Shown here: one piece after another, positions 1-41,900 of the stretch
How positions within the stretch are numbered: the stretch's first letter is position 1
Layout of the letters: every line of letters begins with the position of its first letter
Assembly (NCBI GenBank): GCA_000320545.1
Contig: ADNK01003064.1
Span: forward strand, 1-64,000
Length of the DNA: 64,000 bases
Source: Bigelowiella natans CCMP2755
Taxonomy: Eukaryota > Protista > Cercozoa
Direction: 5' to 3'
The notes under the pieces: model-generated
The model's input: the letters and a program-made list of their open reading frames with translations, nothing else
What the model was told of the DNA's origin: nothing
Database searches by the model: none
Made by a program: the position numbers and the translations under genes

Positions 1-113
1 CCTAACCCTGACCCTGACCCTTACCCTTACCCTGACCCTGACCCTTACCCTGACCCTGACCCTGACCCTGACCCTGACCCTGACCCTTACCCTGACCCTG
101 ACCCTGACCCTGA
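1..113. repeat. Telomere-like hexamer array (14x CCCTGA, 4x CCCTTA, one partial CCTAA)
   Basis: Perfect 6-bp periodicity from base 1, C-rich strand on +, as expected at a left chromosome end with a TTAGGG-type telomere. The alternative reading, a Gly-Gln/Gly-Lys coding repeat on the minus strand (ORF 2..310), is not excluded. Confidence 0.65.
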
Positions 114-1330
114 CCCCTTTGTCGTTTTTTTTTGCCAGTTTTCCTCGCCAGGATCCTCGTTTCGATCTTTGTTTGGATCTGTTTTTTGTTTTGGTCCTGG
201 CAAATGAGCATTGAAACCCCTTTGAATCCAAACCCCACTGTGACCTTGTCCCTGTCCCCAACTGAAACTCCAATCAGTTTGTTAATCCATGATGTTGGGA
301 TGATCGACACAGCTAGCTAGTCTAATCACGGCAACATTGAGAGTTTGATGTGACCAATGGCGCAGTTCAAAGCATGCCACGTCAAGTCAAAGTGTTGTGT
401 TGCATTGTCCACTAGGATCAATGCATGTGGAAATTGTTTCTCAGTGCATCTAGGATTCGAGGACCGCCACACACGCATTCTCTCAATTCAGGCAACTTTG
501 GAAAGGTGGCCAATTTTGCTCATTCAAAAAACAATTGATTGTGCACGGTGCATGAAAAATTGGCCCAATCTAGCAATCGCTGGCACGTGCATGTCACACT
601 GGTGCAGGCACACCCGTGTGCCAAACGGTTTGTCACATGCACGCGCGTGTGAAGCGTTGGGCTGCACCAAACTTGCTGAGTTTTTTCGTCGTGCATTCCC
701 CCCAAAAATTGTCATGATCTGCATGCTGATCTTGGCGACTAGCCGATTGTGTTTGCTACAGCTAGCAGTGCGGCATGAAAATTTTTTCAGCCGAGCCGCG
801 AAACAAGCCAATGCGATTCAAACCAGAGGTTGTTGTCATTTTGCGAATTGCCACGGCGCGCTCAATTTGGAAAGTCAACCAGACACCCAATCTTTGTCTT
901 TGCTGTGGTTCTTGTGGATCATGCAACGCACATCCACACAAAAATGCACTGTGGTCGTCGCGGCCGTGCTGCCATGGTTGCACACCAGGTCGATCAATTG
1001 GTGCAATCTGAATCATTGCATCATTCGGACAATGCTGATTGTTGTTTCTCTGCATGGTCGGTTAACCATGAATTGATGTTGCTAATGTGACTTGTTCCTG
1101 CAGAACATCATCTTTTTCTACTTGGTTTTTTTTTCCATCTCATTTTGATGACTATGCAACAAAAATTGTGTGAGCTGACATGACTGTTGCATCACATTTT
1201 GGACAACGAAAACTGCTCTGTGACTTCTTTCTCTCTTCTTTTGCACACGTGACACACAAAGCTACATGACCGCATGGAATCATGCACACTTTAGCAATGT
1301 TCTTTTTGCATTTTCCGCAGCCTGATGACA
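114..1330. other. TpA-depleted, TG/CA-rich hypermutated island (subtelomeric)
   Basis: 361-1020 contains only 6 TA (5 CTAG, 1 CTAC) by manual count; CpG is retained. Overlapping ORFs are open in many frames because TAA/TAG are absent. Confidence 0.85.
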
Positions 1331-2689
1331 ATGTCGATTCCTCATCTCTTGAATCCACTCCCTCCTTGATAATGGCACTCATAAGGTCAACGTGTCAATT
1401 AGAATATTTGTTCACTTTCATTTTGATGACATGCTTCCTCCCCACATGTTTAACCTTTGCTCTCTCACTTCCTCGTATCTTTAATACATCAGATGTCACG
1501 GTCCTGCACACTGGACAACGAGGGTCTTTGTTCTCGTTTTTTGCATTTTTGTGCAATGTTTTGGCGCAGCTCTCACAACATACCTAGTATGAACAAAACA
1601 AAGTCTCATACACCATTGAGATTTAAAATTTCTATTTGTTGGGCTTTTATCACTCAATTTCCTTATCTTTTATTACTTCAACTCTAACATCGTACCGCGT
1701 GATGGCATGGCAGGAAAGCCGTGTTTCTATCCCTTTCGAAGCAGACAATGCATTTTGTGCTCCTCTTTGTGTTATCATTAGCACATTGCTGATGTTTTGA
1801 GTCAGTCTGAAATATCCACAATTAGCGTAAGTCATTCCTATTTCAATATTATTATATGTACAAATAAGCAGCAAGCCAGTGAAATATTATATATATATAT
1901 ATATACATATAGAGTAAAAGAGAGGAGAAGTCGATGAACTTATGATTTTATAAGAATCCTGCGGTTTTCATCTTTCTGCGTGCTTACTAAGTGTTGTGTG
2001 TAACATTACCCCTTCAAGATGCTTACTACTCCATATTTCTGGGCATTCATCGAAGTATGTTGATGATGGTGATGATGATGATGATGATGACGATGATGAT
2101 GAATCCTCTAATTCTTCTTGATTCCCATAGCTATAAGAGCTACGACTAGCTTCATCACGGTAGGAATAGTGATGGCCTATCTCATTTTCATTCCTTAGAT
2201 ATATAATTGGAGCATGAGAGGATGCGACTGAGCCTGTTCCCGTCCCATTTCTTGTGACTTTATTGTTTGTTCCCACAGCTTTTATCTTTCGTCCGTTGGC
2301 AGTGTTGTTGTCGCCGTGAATATTTATACAAACCTTTAAGTTAAATACCACACGCATCACGGAAAAGAACAGATTAGACCAAATCCTTTGATTTTCTTGC
2401 GCGTTGGGATAATATCCCTCTCAAAAAGGAATTTTATTTATGAATAATCGAAGGCTATTTCTGATATCGTGACTAAATTTCGCAATATTGAAAATTCTCC
2501 TGTTCGAAGTAAGTGAATTACTTGTGTATTGTATCATCTCTATTGTTGTCATTTATATTTGCATATTTACCCCTGAGATTGAATTGAAGCTACCATATAC
2601 ATCTATATCCACACCTAAATGTATGTGATTCCAACATTCAACCTTTATTCATCTGATTGATGCAAAAATACCATACAGTGTACATTTCG

Positions 2690-5429: not shown

Positions 5430-5871
5430 CCTACGTATATCTAGTGGTAATAATATGGTCCTAAAACACTAACGTCAATTGTTCAGAGCAGAGATTTTAT
5501 TGGAAATGGAGATGCCAAATCATGCATTGGTCTTAACCTAATCCATCTAAGCTATGTGAATAAATGAATGAATGATTTGGTCGAAGAAGATACTTTCTTC
5601 TACCAATACTGAAAACCAGTAAGATAAGTGGCTGAGCACTGCTTTAAATGCTTGTGAGTACTCGTTCAATTATGACCCGTCTTGTCTGACCGTATTTAGA
5701 TAGATTGTGGGAGGGTGTTACGTGAAAACCCTCGATATCCAAGACCATATAAGATTGCAGCTAGGTAACATTTCTCACCCCTTCTCTGTCCCCCCTTTCG
5801 AAACTATCTCGCCTTGGCTACCGCAGCAAACAACTGTAAATAGATTCCTATCAGCATTCGTGCAGTATAAT

Positions 5872-5903
<32 letters not shown>

Positions 5904-5923
5904 TTATATCTTTATATATGTAT

Positions 5924-5976
<53 letters not shown>

Positions 5977-6270
5977 ATCGCACGTATGAAAATATACACA
6001 TACACATACATATGCAGATATAAATATGTAAACATATATACACCTGCGGATGTATGTATGTTTTAGGGCATTTTGTATGCTCGGAAAATGGCAAGAAGCT
6101 TTGCAAAAAGTCTCCAGAGCAAATGAGCTTTTCGCGTAAGCAGCAATTGTGTTCTATTATGTACGAATTATAATCATTAGCACAAAACAACAAACCCCAT
6201 CCATAGGGACGAATCAAGTATTAAGCTTCATAACGACTTGCTGAAGAAGCTGAGAAAGGGTGGCACCTAA
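4101..6270 (+). CDS. HIP/ST13-like Hsp70-interacting TPR protein (short form)
   Basis: Exons: MSTGSKPLSRMEASLRFLVK; SEEATDILIEAM|DAMDAGNKRDALKLVTR|AITIKPTISSVLKR|AEILLEMEMPNHAL...ENPRYPRPYKIAAR|AFCMLGKWQEALQKVSRANEL. These parallel the ST13 TPR region (AIxLNP...KRA...KPNAA...PYK.RGKA...LG.WEEA). Confidence 0.75.
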
Positions 6271-6479: not shown

Positions 6480-7980
6480 TGTGCATGAGTGTGAAAACAG
6501 GTACACCTCTATGTCAATTGTGCATGACTAGATGACCTGAAATGAGCAAATGCGGGCGACAGCAGTGTGCATGATGTTCACATCACCGCTGCGTTGTGTG
6601 GTCGCATTGCAGCAGCCGTGTGGCGTGGTGATCATTGTCGCGGTTGCACAGCGCAGCAGCTCCATAGCCCTTTTAGGCTACATTGACTCGGTACGCTCCA
6701 CAGCCCTTTTGGGCTACATGCAGCAGGTAGAGCATGCCCCAGTTTTTTCCCTACAACTGCAATGCAATCAGCACATGCATGGATACTCACAAGTCATGGG
6801 GACTCATGAGTCCATGTGCATGAGCAGTGGAAATGCCGCAAAATTCGCATTGCAAAACAAAAACATCACCCACTGCTGAACCAAATTGCTAGAATGACAT
6901 GACAAAAATCATGGGCACAGCAGATGTGAAGCAGCATGGACAGCAGCCACATTGGGATGTTGGGATGACCATTGAAAAGATTTGATCACTTCACTGCATC
7001 CGTCTCACGTGTCTTTCATCAAAGTGATCTGTAGCTGTGTTGAAATGACACATCAGCAAAAAAGTGTCATCGCCAGAGCATTGTGCCATTCTGGCGCTGC
7101 CTGCATCGCGCCATTGCCCACGTCACACACACTTTCGCCGCTGTCAGCTAGCCGCGAACTTGCTTTTCCTTTTCTGTGCGTCCTCAATCATTTCTGTCAC
7201 GTTGATGCCAACAACTCAGAACTCTGCTAGCTCGCGAGAGCCTCATCTTCAAAGTCACTTGCAAACGAAAGGCTGAAGGTTTCTGCCATCGACTGGGGGA
7301 CAAGAAAAAACACTCGAGCTTTCTCCGCTTCTGATGCACCGAATGAAATCAGTTCATCAACGCATCCACGGACTTCGTGCTGCCAATCGCGACTTGGTGC
7401 AGTGTCCGACAGTTTGTTGCTGCATCGATGGCGGCCGGGTGGTTTTTGGGACACACTGTGTGTTCCAACTTTTGATCCTCAGCTCTGGAGCTGTCTTTTT
7501 GATGTGTTCTCGGCGTTTGTCCATCTGGCCTTTCACGCCGCCCGAGAAAATTTTCAAAGTTGAATGAGCAGGAAACTCGTGAACCTTGTCTTTCCAATCA
7601 CCACTCTCGTTCTTTTTTTCAGCGTCAGCCCGCTGCTCAGGGAGACGTCTGGCGAAAAGTTTGCAACCCTTGCAAGTTTCAGCAAAGAACCATTTCTCGC
7701 CATTCAATCCGGTGATGTTTTCAGAATGCTTCTCTGCATGCGCTTGGAAGACCTTGCTCTCAATCGTGACCTTTCACGTGGTTTTTGTTCGTTTCTCATG
7801 AACGTGGATGGAAAGTGACTTGCACGCAGTCCCTTGACTTCCACTGGGGTTTGGTGTTCTTGACTTGCACATTTACTTGCACAGTTGCAGTGGAATGTCT
7901 CGAATGGTTTTCTTTTGGCTTGTTTATCTAAAGTTTTAACACAATTGAGGATGTTGTCGCACCATGAGTCGGCGTGGGGT
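6480..7980. other. TpA-depleted hypermutated island
   Basis: 6841-7860 (1020 bp) has 4 TA (3 CTAG, 1 GTAG); 7261-7860 has none; CpG is frequent. Confidence 0.9.
7357..7830 (-). pseudogene. Relic ORF of unknown origin (possibly TE/viral) with apparent Tyr->His/Cys recoding
   Basis: KSLSIHVHEKRTKTT*KVTIESKVFQAHAEKHSENITGLNGEKWFFAETCKGCKLFARRLPEQ...DWKDKVHEFPAH: charged, protein-like composition, zero Tyr, with His/Cys at aromatic-like positions. Family not recognised. Confidence 0.5.
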
Positions 7981-8387: not shown

Positions 8388-10933
8388 GTGATGATCTGGG
8401 AGAAAATGAGGATTTCACTGAACCGCCTCCGTCAGACCATCATGTAAAACATTTGTTCGCCCTCTCAGATTCAGAACTTCGTCATCAAGTAAATACCGAA
8501 TAGATAAAAAGGGAAACATGTTGCATTTTTGGTATGAATTCAAATATTTGAGAGGTTGTACTTTTGTTATGAAACTTTTGATATGAATTCAAATATCTAA
8601 GGGACATTCATATTACTTTAGGGCCTTTTTGCGATCGAGGGTAACCTATAGTCTCCATTCATCTCACTCAAACAATTGTGCATAGCTTCTTTTGATTGCC
8701 GCCATTTCAGTTGCCTGTGACGAACTATCAATTATATTTTATTGCTTCGAATGCTATGATTTTTTAAACTTCATTTGTGTTCTATGCATGAAGTAACATA
8801 TTTATGATATCGATGCAACAAAGGCTTGAAGTTGATTCGAGAAGTTATTTCCGCTGCAAAAACTTGTCCATTGGCCGTTATTACAAAGTAGTAATTTTAG
8901 CATCAAATTCATCAATTAATGCAAATTTTAAAACCGAATTTTCAGAATTGAGAATACCAAAGGACTACACTTCTACTTCAACAAACATTTTTACGATCAC
9001 GATCAATACCTGGGACACATTTTCTTCACTTTTAACATCAGTTTCGCGACATTTCAAGATGTGACAAAGGAACTACTCCAAGTGAGGAAAAATCATAGTA
9101 TTCTCCAGGATGACGGTACGTCATTATTCAAGATAGTTCATCACCCTCTTCATGAAGGTGATGATTGCGGTAAGAAGGAAGTGGACCATGGCACACTTTG
9201 CTATGGAAGCAATGGTGGTGAAGTATCAAAACGAGTTGAAACAGTTCCAGTGGTTGTGGGTGATTCAAATAGGATTTGTCAATTAACACGATATCGTGGC
9301 TGGAAGGTATGTGAACCACTAAGAATGATTGGCAATGAATAATAACAAGGTTAAAGCCAACACGAACTAAGACACAGAAAGATGATAATAAATGTCCATT
9401 ATAAATGATATTCTTAATGAAAGAAAGTATACGGAACGTCGAAGTGGGATTTGCACAGCAAGTCTGCTTTGAATGTTGAAAAAATAAATTTTCATATCGT
9501 ATATGTGCATCAAAGAAGAATGCATATTTGCAGTAATTTTCTAGTCATTTTTGTATGTCTTCCAAGTTTATGTTATTGAGTATATGTATATTTGCGCATC
9601 ATTGAGTAGCAAGTATAAAGGGAAAACGTGTACATTGTCAGATTGGGTGTATGGCTATATTCTCGAGAAGATCCGTTTATCGTATGGTGACAGCGAATCA
9701 TTATTCATTAGAGTCTCCTCGCCCAATGGCAGCATCTTTATGGTCTTCGTCGCATTGTAACCCTTATTACGATACTGTTAATTCTACTGCTGTAATCAAA
9801 CGTTGGATTGATGCTCTCCTTTCTTCTGATGGCGACAATGAAGTAGATGAATTCAAGCAACAATCAAGAAGAAGGTGGCTGCATCTCGTCCTGAATCTGT
9901 TTACCGAAGTTAAGCTAAATTCAATTTCAGTAGTGAAAGAACACCAAAGGATACAATCATTCTGATTTTAGACCACATCACAAAGGCGGAGGTGAGCATA
10001 CAATCCAACATACATTGATTTTTTGCAATATCCAGGATGTGAACCGTCAACATTAGGTGAGGTGATGTCATGGCTATACATATTGTTTCATCAATCATTC
10101 TTACCATCCATGTACTGAGGGTTGAAAATAGAGTGACGAGAACAGTTGGTTCTTTGTTCGAATTACATAATGAGATACTACCTGTATTTTTTTTATCTTC
10201 TCTTACTCTAGAATATAGGATCTATATTCAAACTGGCAAACAAATTTGGTGTGGCCGGTGTGATCTTGGCTACGGTAGTAGAAAAAAAAAAGAATTATAT
10301 ATTTTCAATACCAACCGAAATATTAGTATAACCAACCTGTTTGACGGTCATGAATTCGTCTATCAAGCACTTATTATTATGTTTGTCGTCGTCGTCGATG
10401 ATATCAATCAACAATAGGGATGCTGTGATCCACTGTATAGGCGCGTAGTATATGAATCAAGAAAACAAACATGGTATTTATAACAGTAGCAGATACTAGT
10501 GGGAAACGATGACAAATGAATTCAGAGGAGAGCGAAATATATTGTTGCCTAAAAACGACAAATTTATAATGGTCTCGATTTGTCTTCCACATAGTATCCC
10601 TATATCGATGCTGAATCCTCTTTCTTAGTACTAATTTTCAATATCGCATTGGATACCCTTTTTATATTCCAGTGATATTTTTAACCCTCCACTCTCAGGT
10701 ACCTTCCTCATCTTGTTCTTTCAAATGAAAGAGACTACGACACCGTGATGTCAGAATTAAAAGTAAAGGGCATCGGCATCACTGCTCTATCGTTATCTGA
10801 TCCATCGAATGGCACTGTCATGACTCCAAACCAGATCCTTTGTGACTATGAGAAGGGAAGGAAGGAAAGAAGGAGAGGTACTAATATCTTCGATCACTTC
10901 AATAGCCATCTTACTCCAAACATACTATAAATA

Positions 10934-10975
<42 letters not shown>

Positions 10976-11358
10976 TATCTTTACACACACACACACACAT
11001 TAATTACAGAAGAGAGGGGAAAGATGTATCAGCAGCACATTGGCAGAGAAAACAGTAAAAGTAATATTGTTGATGGTATCGCACTGGTACTCGGAAATGA
11101 ACATCGAGGTCTTCCAAGGCGTATCATTGACAGAGTTGACAAGGTTATTGCAAATATGAGCGCTATTCTAAAATGTACTGGCGAGAAAAATTGCGATTCT
11201 ACCTAAACTAATGCGTTTGAAAAATATGTATCTTACAGACGGTGAAAATACCAATCAGCGATGCAATTGATAGTTTGAACGTCGCCATGTCGCTATCAGT
11301 GATGCTCTACAAACTGCATCAATTAGTTAGCAGGTTGGTGCATGAAAATCTGCAATGA
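8388..11358 (+). CDS. SpoU/TrmH-family (SPOUT) RNA 2'-O-methyltransferase, multi-exon; N-terminus unresolved
   Basis: Exons GCEPSTLG|SIFKLANKFGVAGVILAT|GCCDPLYRR (motif 1), IALVLGNEHRGLP (GxExxGL motif 2) and VKIPISDAIDSLNVAMSLSVMLY (SLNV motif 3). Confidence 0.9.
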
Positions 11359-11375: not shown

Positions 11376-11657
11376 ATGTCAAATATACAACTTGAACGAA
11401 ACGCAGAATTCACAAAACGAAGATGGTCGAGTTTGGTGACCTCGTGGATGTGTATGTGCGTTGTGCTGCGTTGTCTTCCCTCCTCTGCTCGCCCTATCTC
11501 CCCAAAATTCAGATGATGTCTTCGACGACATTTCGGAGGAGCTTCGACAGATCAGTGAGGAGGGCTATGAAAGGCAGAGCCATGATGACGACTCGGATTT
11601 TGTAAGGAAAACAGACTTTTTCTCGCGACATCGCGGAATTTACGACGACGACAATGG

Positions 11658-11689
<32 letters not shown>

Positions 11690-11817
11690 GGGTTCAAGCG
11701 TCGTCCTTGGGATGCAGCGTCCGAATCGTAGATGAATGCGCTCATGATGAAGATCGGAACAAAAGAAATTTGTTATGTCTTAATTTGTGCTTCAATGATG
11801 GAAAGTTCAAGCCTTGA
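11376..11817 (+). CDS. Possible small acidic protein of unknown function
   Basis: ATG at 11376 plus a gtatgt...cag intron gives MSNIQLERNAEFTKRRWSSLVTSWMYDVFDDISEELRQISEEGYERQSHDDDSDF. No recognisable domain. Confidence 0.3.
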
Positions 11818-12700
11818 AGTGCCATTTTGAAAAATGTTGCATCATGCCACATGGTGCGAAGGCAAGCATGCAGCCAGCAAACATTGCACATTGGACATTC
11901 GTGTGCATGTGTGCCCTGCAATGCTGCATACGCATGGACATCTGTGTTCGATCCCTTGCCATGTGTGCATGTTGATCAGAACAGAATGGGCCGGGGATGA
12001 TGTCCAACAGTGTGCGCAAAGTGGTGCGCATTTTCGTTGGGTCATGCTTGTAGTTTGGGTTTGAGTAGCAGTGCATTGATCGCAGCATTGTGCTGCAATT
12101 GACAAAAAACACAAGTGCCGCTGCGATGCCCGTGTGCATTTTGAAGTCTTTTGAGACTGGCTTGTGGCGTGAATTCATTTGAGCTCAGAAAGTTGGGTGA
12201 TTGTTTGAATTTTTTGTCTTTTTCAAATCATTTCAACAGCATGCATGGAGCTCAGCGTTGGCTTCCTTAGAAACATCAAATGAATTTGTTTCGGTCAGAG
12301 ATCAAAGACTGAGAAAGTGATCCACACAGCTTTTCTGTTTTGCAAGTGACAAGTGAGGTTGTCCTCACTGAGAACGGTGACATTGTTTTCTGACATTTTT
12401 TGTTGATTGTCATCGGGCACAAAGCTGCCACGTGCATTGCATTTTGCAAGTTGCCATTTTCATGGCTGTCTTTTTCGTTTGAGGGGAGGAAACTCATTGG
12501 GATCCTTCAAGTTAGGAACGGGCAAAGGATTGGCTTCTCCCTCTGCCTCATTTCCCTTCGACAACAGGTCCAATCCAATGCGTTTTCTGCGTTCATCGAT
12601 GCTCTCGATGAGAACGTCCACGCGATCGCCACGACGAAGGATGTCGCCTGCGGAACAAAAAGCGCTGCCAGATGAACTACGAGCGGATTCTTCCTGCCGA
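11815..12700. other. TpA-depleted hypermutated island overlapping the 3' end of the S1-domain gene
   Basis: 11821-12660 (840 bp) has 5 TA, 4 of them in NTAG. Confidence 0.85.
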
Positions 12701-13435
12701 TTGTTCCAGAACCGCAAGCAGCCAAGCTAGCCAAGCGGAATTATTCCGTCTTTCGTGGCACCAATGTCTACGAATGCACCAAAGTGAAGCACGTTTTTCA
12801 CGTGTCCTTCCAGAACCATTCCTACCTTTAGTGCTTCAAGGCGCTTGCGAGTTACTTTAATCTTCGTTCCAGCTTCTTGCAGATTGGACGACAGGTGCTG
12901 ATGCACTTTCTTCGTTGGCGCAGAATCAATGAGTTTGTTGTGGAATGCAGTCAAGTCTTCGTCACCCTTGATACTGGGTGAGCGTGACGAGCTGCAGGAC
13001 CCCATTTTCGATTCAGTAGGACTTGTGGCGTTCGTCGTGGCTGCTACAGAGGATGATGATGTAGATGATGATGATGAAGGTTTCTTCATGCCCGGACTGT
13101 GCAAGTAGTTGAGAAATGCACGCGACTTAGCATCGGCGGGAGCACGTTCCAGGTCAATTTGACGCTGAGAAACCCGTGAGACAACCACCTCAATGACGTC
13201 TCCAGGCTGAAGCACCTCGCGACAGTCTTCGGTCTTTGGATGCCACAGTTTCATAGTGGACTCGTATTTGTTAAAGAACTTCTTCAGGGAAAGAGCAGCC
13301 ACACGTGAGCGCGGTAGTACACCTAGGATCGTTCCAAATCCAATGTCAACGGAAGCGGCTTTCAGGTTCTGAAGAATGTTAATTGGAGAGATTCGGTGTG
13401 TTGTTCCGATGACCTCACCAGCTGCTATTTGCTGC
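12460..13435 (-). pseudogene. Two-S1-domain RNA-binding protein (ribosomal S1/Tex-like) with an in-frame TAG in the second S1 domain
   Basis: [38 protein letters not shown]...GDILRRGDRVDVLIESIDERRKRIGLDL; first S1 domain ...ASVDIGFG...EVLQPGDVIEVVVSRV. The stop at 12727-12729 lies within a CTTGGCTAG-CTTGGCTGC duplication. 5' exons are unresolved. Confidence 0.8.
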
Positions 13436-14479: not shown

Positions 14480-15260
14480 TAATTAAACCTATTTTGTAAT
14501 CATTCTTTTGCTGCTGTGCAAAGCGAGCATCAACAGCACCCATGATGATCTAAAGAATGTTGCATCCATTTGTTTCTGCTGTTACTTGCTTCATGGCTCA
14601 TTGCAAAGCATTCGCATAGCATTGTGAGACAGGTGCACGCAAAGTGATTGAATCACTTCAACAAATGGTCAGGCGCAGCTGTGCAAAGAAAGCAGCGGCT
14701 ACAGCGTGCAATGACAAGCATGTGAAGAACAGACAGCTGTGAATCCATGCTAGCATGGCACTGCTGTTTGCATTGCATTGCACCACGTTCAGGATCGTGC
14801 AGGACCTGTCAAGTGCACATGTTTGTAGCGAGCGGCGCAAGAAATTTGGCACACATGTGGGCAAAACATGTGCACCATCAACACACCACCACATGTGGTT
14901 GAGAACTCATAGATGCATGAGCGCAAAACTAAGCGTGTTCGGCGAAAGGACACACGCTCCATGGAAGCCATGCTGCGTGCATTGTGATTGCTAGATTGGG
15001 GTTTGTGTTTCTTGCAAGCACGCTGACACAATGAATGTGAACTCATACAATCGCAGGCCCGCAACACTCATCGCGACATTGAGATGACAGACCAAGAAAG
15101 TCGAGAGAGGGGGCTCGCCCGCTCTCGCTCGTCGAGCAAACATGCATGCCATGGATCACGATGCAGGCTAGCAGGTAGAGCTAGCACGCTCATGCTCCAC
15201 TTCAAGATTGCATGTGGGTAGCTAATGAATGTTCACATCGCTGATGCCCAGCTGGTTTTA
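14480..15260. other. TpA-depleted hypermutated island
   Basis: In 14641-15240 nearly all residual TA are CTAG, CTA or TAG; the region is rich in TGCA/CATG. Confidence 0.85.
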
Positions 15261-23929: not shown

Positions 23930-24960
23930 GCTAGCATTGCATGCGACTTTAGCTACTGTGCTTGTGCACAACCCTGGAACACGATGCACACCGCATTAGC
24001 ATGTTCCTGCTGCCCATCTCAGCATGATGGTTTGTGCCGCATCATTCCAGCAGTATTCGCAATCGTTTGCAGTTCCAGACACAATGGACACAACGTTCAC
24101 ATGACATGTTGAGTGTGCTGTGTAGCTGAAGATGTGCATTCATGTGCACGTTTAGATGTGCACAGCTGCAGTCTAGCAGTGCAGATCGAATGGTCCAAAT
24201 GAACTGTGTTTGTTGCAGCATGAATGACTTCGAAGATGTTCGCACGCTTTGGCGCTCACGTGCAGCGCACCGCAATGGGCCGGTGCTGCGCATGCAGTCT
24301 GCTCCCAACCGAGCGACCAACAGGCTGCACTTTGACCAGATCTTGATTGATCAGGTGCCAGTGCGAGAGACCTCCAGATCCAGAGACGGATCGCCTCTCT
24401 CGCAATGCTGGGGTGATCGATGGCACTGCTAGACTGGCACAGGTCAGACATTCGTGCCACGTCATCACTTCACGATGGTGCTGAGTGCAGTGCCCAAGCG
24501 ATCCAGCGATGGTGAACTCCAGAACTGCCACGCTTTCATCATCAGGAGCAGCAAAGTCGCAGCATCTCTCGCGGAGTGAACCCTGCAAATTTGGGCGCAC
24601 GGGGCGGGACGCTGATTGCAGTGCACCAGTGTGTGGCATGCCAGCAGCAAGCCCACGTGCACAGCTGGACAGCACCGTGCTTGTGCACGTGTTGTGTTTG
24701 TTGTGTGTCGTTTCTTCGTTTTCGGTTCAAGCGATGCATGCGCCTCAGGCACATCTAGACATGCAAGACATCAAGACATCCCCAACTTGTTGTGTTCACT
24801 TGTTTCTGCATTTCGTCACAGTGGGCTTGTGATGTTGGGCTTGTGATGTTGGGCGTTGTGACGCGCAACTCGCTGGCTTTTGTGCGTCTGGTCTTCGATC
24901 ACTTGTTTGCACGTGCACTGTCATTGGGATGTCATTCATCATGGGATGTTCTTCAGGATG
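23930..24960. other. TpA-depleted hypermutated island
   Basis: 24181-24960 (780 bp) contains exactly two TA, both in CTAG; CpG is abundant. Confidence 0.92.
24256..24675 (-). pseudogene. Relic ORF with apparent Tyr->His/Cys recoding, family unknown
   Basis: ...LRERCCDFAAPDDESVAVLEFTIAGSLGHCTQHHREVMTWHECLTCASLAVP...GLSHWHLINQDLVKVQPVG...RLHAQHRPI: no Tyr in 139 aa, with clusters of H/C next to W/L. Confidence 0.5.
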
Positions 24961-25261
24961 TCACTCATCATAAGATGTTTCTGGGATATATTTTTATCCA
25001 GAAAATGTCGAGTAGAGTGTTCATTGGTAACCTCAGTTTCCACCCTCACCTCACTTATGTAAGCAGCGGTGAGCCATCTGGTTGTGTCTTTTGCACCGAC
25101 ATCAGCATACATCGGGATTTAGGTTCCGCACTCTCTTGTCTCTTCCCTTGCCCCTTCTCTTTCATTCTTTGCAGCATTTCCGTTGTCGATGCTAAAAAGG
25201 AACCAATATCATCAGTGCATGTCATCCTGCTAGACGACTGGGTTTCCTACTTCCTCTCACG

Positions 25262-39054: not shown

Positions 39055-39246
39055 AGGGAGAGGAGGGAAAGCATGAATGTATGTCTGAACCTTTATTATT
39101 GTAAGTTTGGAGTTGTGCCCACCATGACAGACACGCTGACGAAAATTCCGTTGTTTACTACATACTCCGTCTGCATCCCGCTCTGTGTTCAGGATTTTTT
39201 TGCGCTGTCGAAGTCCCAGCGCTCTACAAGCTAAAACACCTTCACA

Positions 39247-40645
39247 ATGTCTGAACCATCTAGCGTAATTGGCTTGGAAGAGAATAAACATGGGAGTCTT
39301 TACAATCAAGAGAAAGCCAGGTTAAATTATTACATTGTACTGGAACTCTACAATAAATGTACCGTATTTTTTAACATAATTTTGTGTTTGAACTTCTTTC
39401 TGACTAATTTCCATCAGATTCGAAATTAATCAGGGGAGACGCGTAACTTGGTTAAGAAGGGGTCTGATGGGCTTGTCTCTGTTGATGATAATTCTCTTTA
39501 TTGTATCCTTCGCACTGATCGCCGATCTGGAAGGACGTGTGGATGACAACAACAACAACAACAACTCAGCAGCAGGGTCTAATAGCCTAGTGTTAAGTAC
39601 TTCTCCTGTTAGATCTAACATGGTCTCAGAACTATACCGTGGATCAGGACAATGGGCAGTCAAAAAAAGCCTTCCTTATCTTGCAAGTGATGTTGCAACG
39701 ACAGACTGTGGTGGGAAAATCTACATTGTAGGTGGACTTGAACAAAGTGGTACAACTGTGAGCAATCGCGTTATGGAATATGATCCTATATTTGAGACAT
39801 ATACAAACCTTACTTCCTTGCCCAATCCCCGTTATCGGCACGGTGTCGCATGCATCTCTGGAGCTTCTGCTGGAGACTACAAATTATTCGTTGTAGGTGG
39901 TTTCAATTCTACAGCCCGTGGAAATAGTGGACAACCTGAGGCCGATGTATTTGAGTATAATTCAGCAACACAAATCTGGCAAATCACTTCCAGGTTGATC
40001 GTACCTCGAGGGGATCATGCGATTGCTCAAATGAACAGCAGCATTTATGTATTTGGAGGATATGGTTTAAACTACAATATGGCTATGAGTGGAACCTCTC
40101 TTGAAATCATGAATACAGCTGCTGGACGAACATGGACAGCTGGGCCCAATATGCCAACATCTCGTGGTGATGTTAAAGCTGCGGTGCTTAATGGTAAAAT
40201 ATATGTAGTGGGGGGATGGAATGACGTGACTTATGGGTTCCAAAACGCTGTCGAGGCTTATAACCCTCAAACAAACGTCTGGGAATCTCTAGCAAGTCTA
40301 CCTGTTGCCCGTGGTGATTGTGCAGTTGCTGCTATTGCGGGCAGACTTGTTGTTGTTGGTGGAGAGATTTGGTCTGGAACAAGACGTCCATGCGACTGGG
40401 ATCCTTCCACCACATGTAATGTCAACGAGATTCCAGTACATAATGTTGAACAATATGATCCAAATACGAACTATTGGACACCTCTCGCCCCGCTCCCGAC
40501 TGCTAGATTCCGATTTGATGCTTCAGCTGAAAATGGTGCTCTCTTCGTGTTTGGAGGTCACATGATCGGCAATGTTGATGTTGGAAACGTGGATGCTTTG
40601 TACCTTATCGACCACCCAAGCATTTTCGTACACAAGAAGAGCTAA
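39247..40645 (+). CDS. Membrane-anchored kelch-repeat (beta-propeller) protein; one short 5' exon plus a ~1.2-kb exon
   Basis: The 392-aa ORF has a hydrophobic N-terminal segment and repeated GG...Y...W kelch motifs (KIYIVGG, SIYVFGG, KIYVVGG, RLVVVGG, ALFVFGG). Upstream exon MSEPSS...EKAR splices in frame via gttaaa...catcag. Confidence 0.93.
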
Positions 40646-40702
40646 CTTCTTGTACCTTATCGACCACCCAAGTAATTTCGTACACAAGAAGAGCTAACTT
40701 CT
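40598..40702. repeat. 52-bp tandem duplication spanning the kelch gene stop codon
   Basis: TTGTACCTTATCGACCACCCAAG(CATT/TAAT)TTCGTACACAAGAAGAGCTAACTTC occurs twice with period 52. Confidence 0.95.
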
Positions 40703-40739
40703 TTAAAAATGATAAGAGGTTGCAGTGAGTAACACTACA

Positions 40740-41900
40740 ATGTCTTAGTATTTGAGCATGTGTAGCAGCAACTATTTGTTTTCTGTGCTTTAGATCAATT
40801 TTACAACAATGTGTGAAAGCAAACTGCTTGTTTTTTGTTGCTGACGTTCGCCAGCTCCACACAGCGCGCACATGCAGCTTTTCGTGAATACCCATTGGTT
40901 AGTACTGAAATAGTCATGTGCACCATTCTAGCATTCTAGCATTTCTCGGGGAAACTTGTCGGTCTTTGCTAGTTATGGCGTGATGCATGCACACAAAAAT
41001 GCTGCTTCACACTTAGCCGCCAGACAACCATGCTAAATCGTGTCATTAATTATAGCGCATTTGCTTCGGCAAACATGATTCGCCAACCTCACACACGCCA
41101 CATTGCTAGATTATGCTATGGTGAACGCTGCTGTGGTTTTGATGCGCAACTAGGCATGTTAGCATGGTCTGTGTGTTGGTGCTCATTGTAGCAATCGATG
41201 CCCGTGCCAAGCTAGCAAGCTGCATGTTTCTAGCTAGGATTTGCTTGTATGCTTGTCCAGCAGATACAATTCAATCTAGGCAATGCATCATCGATTATTT
41301 AATATCAAATGCTTCGCTTTCACGCAAAAAATGCGATGCGATGTCCAAGCTAGCAAGGCTGAATTTATTAAGCACGGCCAGCATGCATATACGTCAGACT
41401 CGATCGAATAACAACAAAATCAGATACTCTTGCGAAAGTGAATCTAGTAATGTGGCATGCAAGCTAGTGAGACAATAGACAAGTAATACGATATATATAC
41501 ATCTAAAGATTATTGTTGAGCATGCAAATTGTGGTGCATAGCAGCAGGATAGCTAGATAGCAGGATAGCAGGGCTAGCGAGGGTGAAACGAGGTGCAATT
41601 TCGGGAATGCTCACTATCTACTACTAGACTAGCATGGATTTGCTTGCGCAGCTGGACCATGCAAGTTGGGAAAACAGGTTTGCTACGATGTAACAGCCGA
41701 ACCCATGATGTGAAATGAAATTATTAGCGAATCTGTGAAGCGCGCATGACGCTCGATTAGAAAGGCCTGCTTCTTGTAGACTGTGTATGTGTGCCATGAA
41801 GTGTGGGAAGGCGAAGAACGAGCGTGCATCCAGTAGCATTGAGACTAGTGACATTGCATGTTCTTGAATGCGAGCGCGCTGACACCAAGGATGTGGTAAA
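40740..41900. other. Partially TpA-depleted, CTAG- and TGCA-rich island between convergent kelch and ABCG genes
   Basis: Many surviving TA are in CTAG (gctagc, tctagc, gctagg); TG/CA is in strong excess. Confidence 0.75.

What the first reader, a model, noticed from the sequence alone, without database searches (positions are those of the whole stretch)
6841..7860. TpA-targeted hypermutation islands (reverse-RIP signature): TA erased, TG/CA gained, CpG kept, CTAG spared
Seen: 1020 bp with 4 TA (none in 7261-7860, where base composition predicts roughly 30-40). The same pattern occurs at 361-1020 (6 TA, 5 CTAG), 11821-12660 (5 TA, 4 NTAG), 14640-15240 and 24181-24960 (2 TA, both CTAG), while flanking DNA is TA-rich. 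CpG is plentiful. Established: 5mC deamination depletes CpG, and fungal RIP creates TpA from CpA, so neither fits. Inference: a localised process converts TpA to CpA/TpG (T->C or A->G), and a 5' C / 3' G neighbour is protective, so CTAG is doubly protected. Candidate chemistry is a modified thymine (5hmU/5-formylU or base-J-like via a TET/JBP dioxygenase; 5-formylU mispairs with G) or a DNA adenine deaminase. I know of no description of this for such an alga but cannot search the literature.
Basis: partly seen in the sequence, partly recalled or inferred. Interest (0 to 1): 0.93.

Follow-up and report, generated by a model that had tools for sequence, protein, structure and literature searches.

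The report
TpA-erased hypermutation islands, Bigelowiella subtelomere
Five blocks of about 1 kb near a chromosome end of the alga Bigelowiella natans have had almost every TA dinucleotide turned into TG or CA by a local hypermutation process first reported in a 2026 preprint; here it acts on decayed copies of the alga's own genes and leaves CTAG untouched.

Summary
In 6841-7860 there are 4 TA where 67 are expected (P about 1e-23), and a 646-bp run has none. There are five such islands, all within 25 kb of a telomere array. The window is Bigelowiella natans scaffold_93. A 2026 bioRxiv preprint (doi 10.64898/2026.01.13.699255) showed by mutation accumulation that this alga mutates TpA to TpG/CpA about 1000-fold faster in integrated viral DNA, and it mapped TpA-poor clusters genome-wide. 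The core idea is therefore already described, and other first-stage notes on this genome report the same signature on other DNA. New here: islands 2 and 3 are degenerate duplicates of expressed genes with no viral or transposon signature (Bigna1 137312 and 86555). Parent TA became TG/CA at 35 of 53 sites, against 2 changes the other way. A>G is confined to a 5' T and hits both strands equally. A control gene is symmetric (15:15). Conversion fades across a single duplicate, so island edges are not duplication edges. CTAG keeps its background density, sites with one 5'C or 3'G flank survive at 20%, and unflanked sites at 5%. The preprint's own mutation table also under-hits TAG/CTA. The enzyme is unidentified. 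Islands 1, 4 and 5 have no identified ancestor.

The parts
1..116 (.). Telomere array at the chromosome end, read on the C-rich strand: 14 CCCTGA, 4 CCCTTA and 1 distal CCCTAA unit
   Evidence: Canonical TTAGGG is reported for B. natans (PMC13746701). CCCTGA is the TA-to-TG product of CCCTAA, but the CCCTTA units keep an unprotected TTAC, so a link to the hypermutation is ambiguous.
117..1367 (.). Island 1, TpA-erased block next to the telomere; ancestor not identified
   Evidence: HMM segment with rho_TA 0.17 and rho_CA+TG 1.69. No Pfam, PHROG, protein or viral relative was found for its 239-aa ORF.
6660..6719 (+). Two 24-nt copies (6660-6683 and 6696-6719, start-to-start offset 36) that differ only at two TpA sites (ATAG/ACAG and TTAG/TTGG)
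   Evidence: Sequence. It is identical in purine/pyrimidine coding.
6787..7924 (.).
   Evidence: 5 TA against 75 expected, rho_TA 0.07.
7146..7799 (-). Degenerate duplicate of the 3' part of a chlorarachniophyte gene (Bigna1 137312 family, scaffold 38), with stops and frame breaks
   Evidence: phmmer E=4e-35 to P0128, whose cluster holds Bigna1 137312. blastn of transcript L005 1267-1880 against window 7765-7146 gives 82.5% in blastn, 85% in the global alignment. tblastx matches run on to 7799 (L005 1233-1234). Of 22 parent TA sites, 10 became TG, 6 became CA and 2 were kept.
11392..13251 (.). Island 3, strongest at 11800-12650 and fading towards 13250
   Evidence: rho_TA 0.21; fine map.
12205..13362 (-). 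Duplicate (pseudogene) of the S1-domain gene Bigna1 86555 (scaffold 11). A 9-bp insertion at 12720-12728 creates an in-frame stop where it meets the following base.
   Evidence: Transcript L001 aligns to 13189-12205 at 93% in blastn, 95% over aligned bases. P0127 residues 42-334 match 13362-12478. Of 31 parent TA sites, 10 became TG, 9 became CA and 12 were kept; 2 sites changed the other way.
14500..15162 (.). Island 4; ancestor not identified
   Evidence: rho_TA 0.24 and rho_CA+TG 1.87; no family hits.
24002..24968 (.). Island 5; ancestor not identified
   Evidence: 6 TA against 52 expected, rho_CA+TG 1.84, GC 53%; no family or viral hits.

Best explanation
The islands are chromosomal DNA of Bigelowiella natans that has been run nearly to completion by the locus-restricted TpA-to-TpG/CpA hypermutation described for this alga in 2026. 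At least two of the five islands began as ordinary, TA-containing copies of expressed genes with no viral or transposon signature, duplicated into the subtelomere. They then lost 60-90% of their TpA by A>G or T>C transitions on either strand, while other sites changed at the background rate. The process acts on double-stranded chromosomal DNA in place. It is confined to domains whose edges need not match the duplicated segment. It depends on flanks: R-TA-Y sites are lost first, a 5'C or 3'G slows loss, and CTAG is effectively immune. Shown: the direction, the TpA specificity, the use of both strands, the host-gene ancestry of islands 2 and 3, and the flank effect. Inferred: the chemistry is adenine deamination to hypoxanthine by a TadA/ADAT2-like enzyme, which I put at about even odds. 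Also inferred: the targeting signal is silent or subtelomeric chromatin, or duplication, rather than foreignness.
For: Identity: the Kelch ORF is 99% identical to a cluster holding Bigna1 91212, and the S1 ORF is 100% identical to Bigna1 82468 'fgenesh1_pg.93'. Published experiment: 230 of 231 single-nucleotide mutations in the two hypermutable regions are A>G or T>C, nearly all at TpA. Here: island 2 against L005 has parent TA going to TG 10 and CA 6, with no parent CA or TG going to TA. Island 3 against L001 has TG 10 and CA 9, with 2 the other way and one site CA against TG. The per-strand A>G rate is 0.30-0.43 after a 5'T and 0.02-0.10 after A, C or G, which equals the G>A/C>T baseline. 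Outgroup proteins agree with the parent at 35 sites and with the window copy at 3, including Y>H, Y>C and I>M. Control: the Kelch gene against B. longifila shows TA to CA/TG exchange of 15:15. Both products are about equal (20 TG, 15 CA), which argues against a single-strand RNA or cDNA step. Conversion falls 8/9, 5/7, 4/9, 2/7 across one duplicate while background divergence stays flat at 2-4%. Retention relative to background density is 0.049, 0.20 and 1.07 for 0, 1 and 2 protective flanks. In the preprint's Table S2, TAG/CTA make up 10% of hits against 19% of strand-sites (P=3.5e-4).
Against: No de novo mutation is recorded at these loci: Table S2 lists only an indel at scaffold_93:6619. 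Islands 1, 4 and 5 have no identified ancestor, so for them the reading rests on composition alone. Converting background-like DNA does not reproduce the island composition: TGC/GCA and CpG-containing tetramers are in greater excess than predicted. The ancestors were therefore more GC-rich, probably gene-like DNA. Island 3 has no outgroup. The telomeric CCCTTA units retain unprotected TTAC. The enzyme and the target base (A or T) cannot be told from sequence, because TpA is its own complement.
Confidence: 0.85

Rival explanations
1. The genetic outcome is the same, but the base attacked is thymine. T in TpA would be oxidised or otherwise modified (5hmU, 5-formylU or base-J-like, by a TET/JBP dioxygenase) and would mispair with G, giving T>C.
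For: TpA is self-complementary, so every count here and in the preprint's Table S2 fits T>C on one strand as well as A>G on the other. The four non-TpA events in Table S2 are T>C at ATG (3) and ATT (1), which also read either way.
Against: Nothing in the sequence favours it. The preprint reports an ADAT2-like candidate with the residues linked to DNA editing, but did not report a search for a thymine-modifying enzyme. I know of no locus-wide T>C hypermutation by thymine oxidation (own knowledge).
Confidence: 0.1
2. Editing happened on RNA (ADAR-like A-to-I) or on cDNA, before the gene copies were inserted as retrocopies, and not on the chromosome.
For: Both duplicates are colinear with spliced transcripts over 614-983 nt, as a processed copy would be. 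ADAR prefers a 5' U (own knowledge; also noted).
Against: Both strands are hit about equally: 10 TG to 6 CA on the sense strand in island 2, and 10 to 9 in island 3. Conversion fades gradually along one copy. A 3' G is protective, whereas ADARs favour a 3' G (own knowledge). The mutation-accumulation lines show the changes arising in chromosomal single-copy DNA.
Confidence: 0.03
3. There is no special mutator. The islands are TA-poor because of their origin (foreign or compositionally odd DNA), selection against TA, or GC-biased gene conversion in a recombining subtelomere.
For: The islands are subtelomeric and more GC-rich (46-53% against 39%). Part of their composition is not explained by TA conversion alone.
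Against: The parents carry TA at the very positions where the islands have CA or TG. A>G is raised only after a 5' T and not at other A or T positions. No viral, phage or transposon relatives were found. The fragments are pseudogenes with stops, so codon selection does not apply.
Confidence: 0.02

Closest known systems
TpA hypermutation of integrated NCLDV and virophage DNA in Bigelowiella natans (Mettrop et al., bioRxiv 2026, doi 10.64898/2026.01.13.699255)
   Same: Same species. Same TpA-to-TpG/CpA signature on both strands. Same long-term footprint of low TpA with high CpA+TpG. The preprint also reports 124 genome-wide clusters and 324 low-TpA gene models.
   Different: The islands here are 0.7-1.9 kb, below the preprint's cluster threshold of three consecutive 1-kb windows. 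At least two are duplicates of expressed genes with no viral or transposon signature, not viral or transposon DNA. The preprint's main text does not mention flank context, CTAG or telomeres, and the models in this window are absent from the parts of its gene lists that are held.
Repeat-induced point mutation (RIP) of Neurospora and other fungi
   Same: Local, dinucleotide-specific hypermutation that wrecks duplicated DNA and leaves a strong dinucleotide skew.
   Different: The direction is opposite: RIP makes TpA from CpA, and this process destroys TpA. Here the parent copies are nearly untouched (2-3 changes against 19-21). The island edge does not follow the duplication edge. The preprint observed the process in vegetatively propagated lines, not before meiosis.
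ADAR A-to-I editing and APOBEC/AID cytosine deamination as antiviral or anti-repeat hypermutation in animals
   Same: Clustered transitions with a nearest-neighbour preference, directed at repeats or invaders. ADAR shares the 5' U/T preference.
   Different: ADARs act on double-stranded RNA and favour a 3' G, which is protective here. APOBEC/AID give C>T. Here the substrate is chromosomal DNA and both strands are hit.
TadA/ADAT2 tRNA adenosine deaminases and the adenine base editors derived from TadA
   Same: Their natural target A34 follows U33, a T-A context, and evolved TadA deaminates DNA adenine. TAC is among the best-converted contexts here (13 of 22).
   Different: No natural TadA/ADAT2 is known to hypermutate a chromosome domain. 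The preprint's candidate Bn78255 is a prediction only, and nothing in this window bears on it.

Membership tests
B. natans TpA hypermutation (Mettrop et al. 2026) | The sequence is from the Bigelowiella natans nuclear genome | tested here: met
   The window ORFs match Bigna1 models 91212 and 82468 on scaffold 93. The preprint's indel at scaffold_93:6619 T>TG fits the T followed by G at window position 6619.
B. natans TpA hypermutation (Mettrop et al. 2026) | The excess substitutions are A>G/T>C transitions confined to TpA | tested here: met
   The A>G rate is 0.30-0.43 after a 5'T and 0.02-0.10 otherwise, equal to the baseline. TA went to TG/CA at 35 sites, with 2 the other way.
B. natans TpA hypermutation (Mettrop et al. 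2026) | Both TpG and CpA products occur, so either strand is hit | tested here: met
   20 TG and 15 CA products across the two duplicates.
B. natans TpA hypermutation (Mettrop et al. 2026) | Rho_TpA <= 0.43 together with Rho_CpA+TpG >= 1.52 | tested here: met
   Islands 1, 2, 4 and 5 give 0.17/1.69, 0.07/1.54, 0.24/1.87 and 0.12/1.84. Island 3 gives 0.21/1.43 and narrowly misses the second cut-off.
B. natans TpA hypermutation (Mettrop et al. 2026) | Cluster of at least three consecutive 1-kb windows (the preprint's operational definition) | tested here: not met
   The islands are 663-1860 bp long, so they would escape that screen. The preprint's sheet S10 is not held, so the list itself could not be checked.
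B. natans TpA hypermutation (Mettrop et al. 2026) | The target is of viral or other foreign origin | tested here: not met
   Islands 2 and 3 derive from expressed chlorarachniophyte genes with no viral or transposon domain. Islands 1, 4 and 5 have no relatives at all.
B. natans TpA hypermutation (Mettrop et al. 2026) | De novo TpA mutations arise at the locus in mutation-accumulation lines | not testable with these tools
   Table S2 lists no single-nucleotide mutation on scaffold_93. Only about 64 TA remain in the islands, so few hits would be expected.
Fungal RIP | C>T at CpA, creating TpA | tested here: not met
   The direction is opposite: no parent CA or TG became TA in island 2, and 2 did in island 3.
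Fungal RIP | Both copies of a duplication are mutated, over the duplicated length | tested here: not met
   The parent L001 shows 2-3 TA-type changes against 19-21 in the window copy. Conversion declines within the duplicate.
ADAR-type RNA editing | 3' G favoured, and changes confined to the transcribed strand | tested here: not met
   A 3' G is protective. Sense and antisense products are about equal.
TadA/ADAT2-like DNA adenine deaminase | The enzyme is present and deaminates A in T-A context in DNA | not testable with these tools
   The T-A context fits. The candidate Bn78255 is named only in the preprint, and no such gene lies in this window.

The most novel reading that the evidence does not exclude
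The hypermutation is not aimed at foreign DNA as such. It is aimed at a chromosomal state, either silent or subtelomeric chromatin or non-allelic duplication, so the alga's own displaced gene copies are destroyed as efficiently as viruses. Its flank rule (R-TA-Y fastest, 5'C/3'G slow, CTAG immune beyond what single-flank effects predict) would be a fingerprint of the enzyme, or of a protecting CTAG-specific modification. That fingerprint could be used to identify it.
Probability: 0.4. Interest if true: 0.7.

Novelty: new member of a known kind. Interest (0 to 1): 0.45.

Why it matters
A eukaryote that erases one dinucleotide from chosen stretches of its own chromosomes is a rare, RIP-like genome-defence phenomenon running in the opposite chemical direction, and it has only just been reported. 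This window adds three things that bear on how it works. First, the targets include decayed copies of expressed genes that carry no viral or transposon signature. That questions the 'foreign DNA' reading and points to position, silencing or duplication as the signal. Second, the mutated domain fades within a single duplicate, as a spreading chromatin state would. Third, there is a clear flank rule with CTAG immunity, which gives biochemists a simple oligonucleotide test for any candidate deaminase. It also shows that short islands are missed by the published 3-kb screen.

Tried and rejected
- Rfam scan of the window: no hits.
- Pfam and PHROGs on island ORFs: nothing except the S1 domain of the island 3 pseudogene.
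- Purine/pyrimidine-coded search for paralogues inside the window: only the 24-bp duplication at 6660-6719 and a short repeat at 24924-24982.
- Exact look-up of island ORFs, and of Bigna1 models 86555 and 137312, in public assemblies: not on record. The genomic parents, their introns and the true duplication limits could therefore not be examined.
- Homologue search with the 239-aa ORF of island 1: nothing.
- IMG/VR scans with ORFs of islands 1 and 5: no viral relatives.
- A strand-wise rule, 'A followed by G is not a substrate'. It predicts NTAG to NCAG and CTAN to CTGN; the products were 9 as predicted and 7 not. I rejected it as a strict rule.
- A simple model in which islands equal background DNA with TA converted. 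It accounts for the total TG/CA gain (about 30 against 37 per kb) but not its distribution, because TGC/GCA are too high.
- Reading the telomeric CCCTGA units as hypermutation products: left open, because the CCCTTA units keep unprotected TTAC.

Full report
OBSERVATION. In 6841-7860 there are 4 TA (3 CTAG, 1 GTAG) where base composition predicts 66.9 (o/e 0.06; Poisson P=8e-24; the lowest of 2000 shuffles gave 42). No TA occurs in 7261-7860, and the TA-free run is 646 bp (7228-7874). The other stretches also check out. 361-1020 has 6 TA, 5 of them CTAG. 11821-12660 has 5 TA, 4 of them NTAG. 24181-24960 has 2 TA, both CTAG. 14640-15240 is milder, with 12 TA and o/e 0.34. CA and TG are raised (o/e 1.5-2.0 against 1.23-1.25 for the window), and CpG is not depleted (0.73-0.90 against 0.75).

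A two-state HMM gives five islands: 93-1367, 6787-7924, 11392-13251, 14500-15162 and 24002-24968. All lie within 25 kb of a telomere array at 1-116. The remaining 39 kb holds only two TA-free scraps of 120-160 bp.

ORGANISM AND PRIOR WORK. The Kelch ORF at 39467-40642 is 99% identical to a protein cluster that contains Bigna1 91212, a scaffold 93 model. The next relatives are Bigelowiella longifila, Norrisiella and Chlorarachnion. The S1-domain ORF at 12727-13299 is 100% identical to Bigna1 82468, 'fgenesh1_pg.93'. The window is therefore the start of Bigelowiella natans scaffold_93.

A full-text search found one paper on the subject: Mettrop et al., bioRxiv 2026, doi 10.64898/2026.01.13.699255. 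In a mutation-accumulation experiment, 231 of 302 nuclear single-nucleotide mutations fell in an integrated NCLDV (scaffold_10) and a virophage (scaffold_146). That is about 6e-7 per site per generation, and almost all were A>G or T>C at TpA. The authors also found 324 low-TpA gene models and 124 TpA-poor, CpA+TpG-rich clusters, and they proposed an ADAT2-like adenine deaminase. At least eight other first-stage notes on this genome report the same signature on other DNA. The preprint's main text does not mention flank context, CTAG or telomeres. The gene models of this window are not in the held parts of its low-TpA lists.

WHAT THE ISLANDS ARE. It matches P0128 at E=4e-35 (67% identity) and four further clusters. 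P0128's cluster contains Bigna1 137312 (scaffold 38), one cluster (P0131) is from Lotharella globosa, and the rest are MMETSP or JGI transcript sequences whose organism was not reported. None has a credible Pfam domain. The transcript contig L005 that encodes P0128 aligns to window 7765-7146 at 82.5% in blastn, 85% in the global alignment.

Island 3 contains a copy of a second gene. Transcript L001 aligns to 13189-12205 at 93% in blastn, 95% over aligned bases. Its product is identical over 235 residues to Bigna1 86555, a 334-aa S1-domain protein on scaffold 11. Residues 42-334 of that protein match 13362-12478. The window copy carries a 9-bp insertion at 12720-12728 that creates an in-frame stop where it meets the following base, and the JGI model hides this by calling an intron there.

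Both islands are therefore decayed duplicates of expressed genes with no viral or transposon signature; island 2's parent has relatives in Lotharella globosa and in other marine-eukaryote transcript sets, while no relative of island 3's parent was found outside B. natans apart from a bacterial S1 protein. The parents have transcripts in public data. The exact ORF products of the island copies are not on record, which is weak evidence that the copies are silent.

DIRECTION AND SPECIFICITY.
- Island 2: the 22 parent TA sites became TG (10), CA (6), stayed TA (2) or changed otherwise (4). None of the 81 parent CA or TG sites became TA.
- Island 3: the 31 parent TA sites became TG (10), CA (9) or stayed TA (12). 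Two sites went the other way. At one site the window has CA where the parent has TG, which is most simply explained by an ancestral TA mutated independently in both copies.
- Rate by 5' neighbour: the per-strand A>G frequency is 0.43 and 0.30 after a 5' T. After A, C or G it is 0.07-0.10 and 0.016-0.029, no higher than the G>A/C>T baselines of 0.069 and 0.020.
- Polarity for island 2: where the window copy and the parent differ, a more distant homologue (P0129) agrees with the parent 35 times and with the window 3 times. These sites include Y>H, Y>C and I>M.
- Control: the non-island Kelch gene compared with its B. longifila orthologue, at similar divergence, shows TA to CA/TG exchange of exactly 15:15.
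- Internal control: the two copies of the 24-bp tandem duplication at 6660-6719 differ only at two TpA sites (note s1-417734).

WHERE AND ON WHAT IT ACTS. TG and CA products are about equal on the sense strand (10:6 and 10:9). This rules out editing of an mRNA or first-strand cDNA before insertion, and it fits changes made on duplex chromosomal DNA, as the mutation-accumulation lines show directly.

Within the island 3 duplicate, the converted fraction falls 8/9, 5/7, 4/9, 2/7 from 12205 to 13189, while divergence at other sites stays flat at 2-4%. The edge of the hypermutated domain is therefore not the edge of the duplication. The parent copy is almost untouched. This differs from RIP. It suggests a positional or chromatin signal, although purifying selection on the parent could contribute.

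In the preprint's Table S2, several of the TpA hits outside the two hot regions lie near scaffold starts: scaffold_100:281, scaffold_134:539, scaffold_146:2024 and 2049, and scaffold_78:6956. This lead is compatible with a subtelomeric bias but is untested.

FLANK RULE. I compared the density of each site class in the islands with its density outside them.
- TA sites with neither a 5' C nor a 3' G survive at 4.9%.
- Sites with one such flank survive at 20% (Fisher P=3e-6 against unflanked sites).
- CTAG survives at 107% (16 found, 15 expected; P=1e-10).
- ATAT and GTAC are extinct.

In the two paralogue comparisons the same order holds: 3 of 24, 9 of 26 and 2 of 3 sites were kept. My hand count of the preprint's Table S2 gives TAA/TTA 71, TAT/ATA 76, TAC/GTA 56 and TAG/CTA 23. 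TAG/CTA are thus 10% of hits against 19% of strand-sites in this window's background (P=3.5e-4). That normaliser is not the NCLDV region itself.

A halved per-strand rate would predict only 25% survival of CTAG (P=2e-6 for 16 or more). So either the two flanks act synergistically or the ancestral CTAG density was higher. The products at singly flanked sites (9 as a strand-wise rule predicts, 7 not) do not support a strict rule that 'A followed by G is not a substrate'. Within Table S2, A>G at TAG (3 of 91) is rarer than T>C at CTA (17 of 115; P=0.008). I cannot explain this asymmetry.

MECHANISM. The best-supported reading is in-place hypermutation of TpA in delimited chromosomal domains. The enzyme is unknown. 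Adenine deamination by a TadA/ADAT2-like enzyme is plausible: the T-A context matches U33-A34 of its tRNA substrates, and TAC is well converted (13 of 22). A thymine-directed chemistry gives identical sequence outcomes, because TpA is self-complementary. GC-biased gene conversion, selection against TA, and foreign TA-poor origin are contradicted for islands 2 and 3 by the context specificity and by the TA-bearing parents.

LIMITS.
- Islands 1, 4 and 5 have no detectable relatives, so for them the reading rests on composition.
- The genomic parents on scaffolds 38 and 11 could not be fetched. The introns and the true duplication limits are therefore unknown.
- The island composition has more TGC/GCA and more CpG-containing tetramers than conversion of background-like DNA predicts. 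This fits gene-like ancestors of about 48% GC but does not prove them.
- The telomere array (14 CCCTGA, 4 CCCTTA, 1 distal CCCTAA) may record TA-to-TG changes of the canonical repeat reported for this species. The surviving TTAC in the CCCTTA units argues for caution.

VERDICT. Its core was published as a preprint in 2026. The increment here has four parts: short subtelomeric islands that the published screen would miss, origin of two islands from expressed genes with no viral or transposon signature, a conversion gradient that is uncoupled from the duplication, and CTAG immunity.

Noticed in passing
window 1-116: The telomere array is dominated by the variant CCCTGA (14 units), with 4 CCCTTA and one distal CCCTAA. 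Canonical TTAGGG is reported for the species. CCCTGA is the TA-to-TG product, and CCCCAA, the product blocked by a 5' C, is absent. However, the CCCTTA units keep an unprotected TTAC.
   Followed up: partly
preprint Table S2 (doi 10.64898/2026.01.13.699255), not window DNA: In the mutation-accumulation data for scaffold_10, A>G at TAG (3 of 91) is much rarer than the complementary T>C at CTA (17 of 115; Fisher P=0.008). This strand asymmetry is unexplained. Several TpA hits outside the two hot regions lie within a few kb of scaffold starts.
   Followed up: partly
window 6619: The only mutation-accumulation event the preprint lists on scaffold_93 is an insertion, T>TG at 6619. It lies in a GT-rich stretch on the left flank of island 2.
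   Followed up: no
window 5871-6006 and 10922-11005: Compound (CA)n(TA)n microsatellites in inverted orientation, about 5 kb apart, bracket island 2 and its flanks. These TA-rich repeats are not converted, although they sit between islands.
   Followed up: no
window 39101-40824: An ordinary expressed Kelch-repeat gene (Bigna1 91212) with one intron near 39329-39414. Transcripts L003 and L004 are 99% identical to it. Its rho_TA of 0.73 serves as the non-island baseline.
   Followed up: yes
window 11461-11817: An ORF on the plus strand inside island 3 has a (GAT)n poly-Asp run and no detectable relatives. It lies downstream of the S1 pseudogene, beyond the end of the parent transcript.
   Followed up: no
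L001 and L005 (parent transcripts): The parent genes themselves have lowish rho_TA (0.44 and 0.51, against 0.73 for the Kelch gene) without a raised CA+TG. The scaffold 38 model P0133 has Cys where P0128 and P0129 have Tyr at one site. The parents or further paralogues may have been lightly hit.
   Followed up: no
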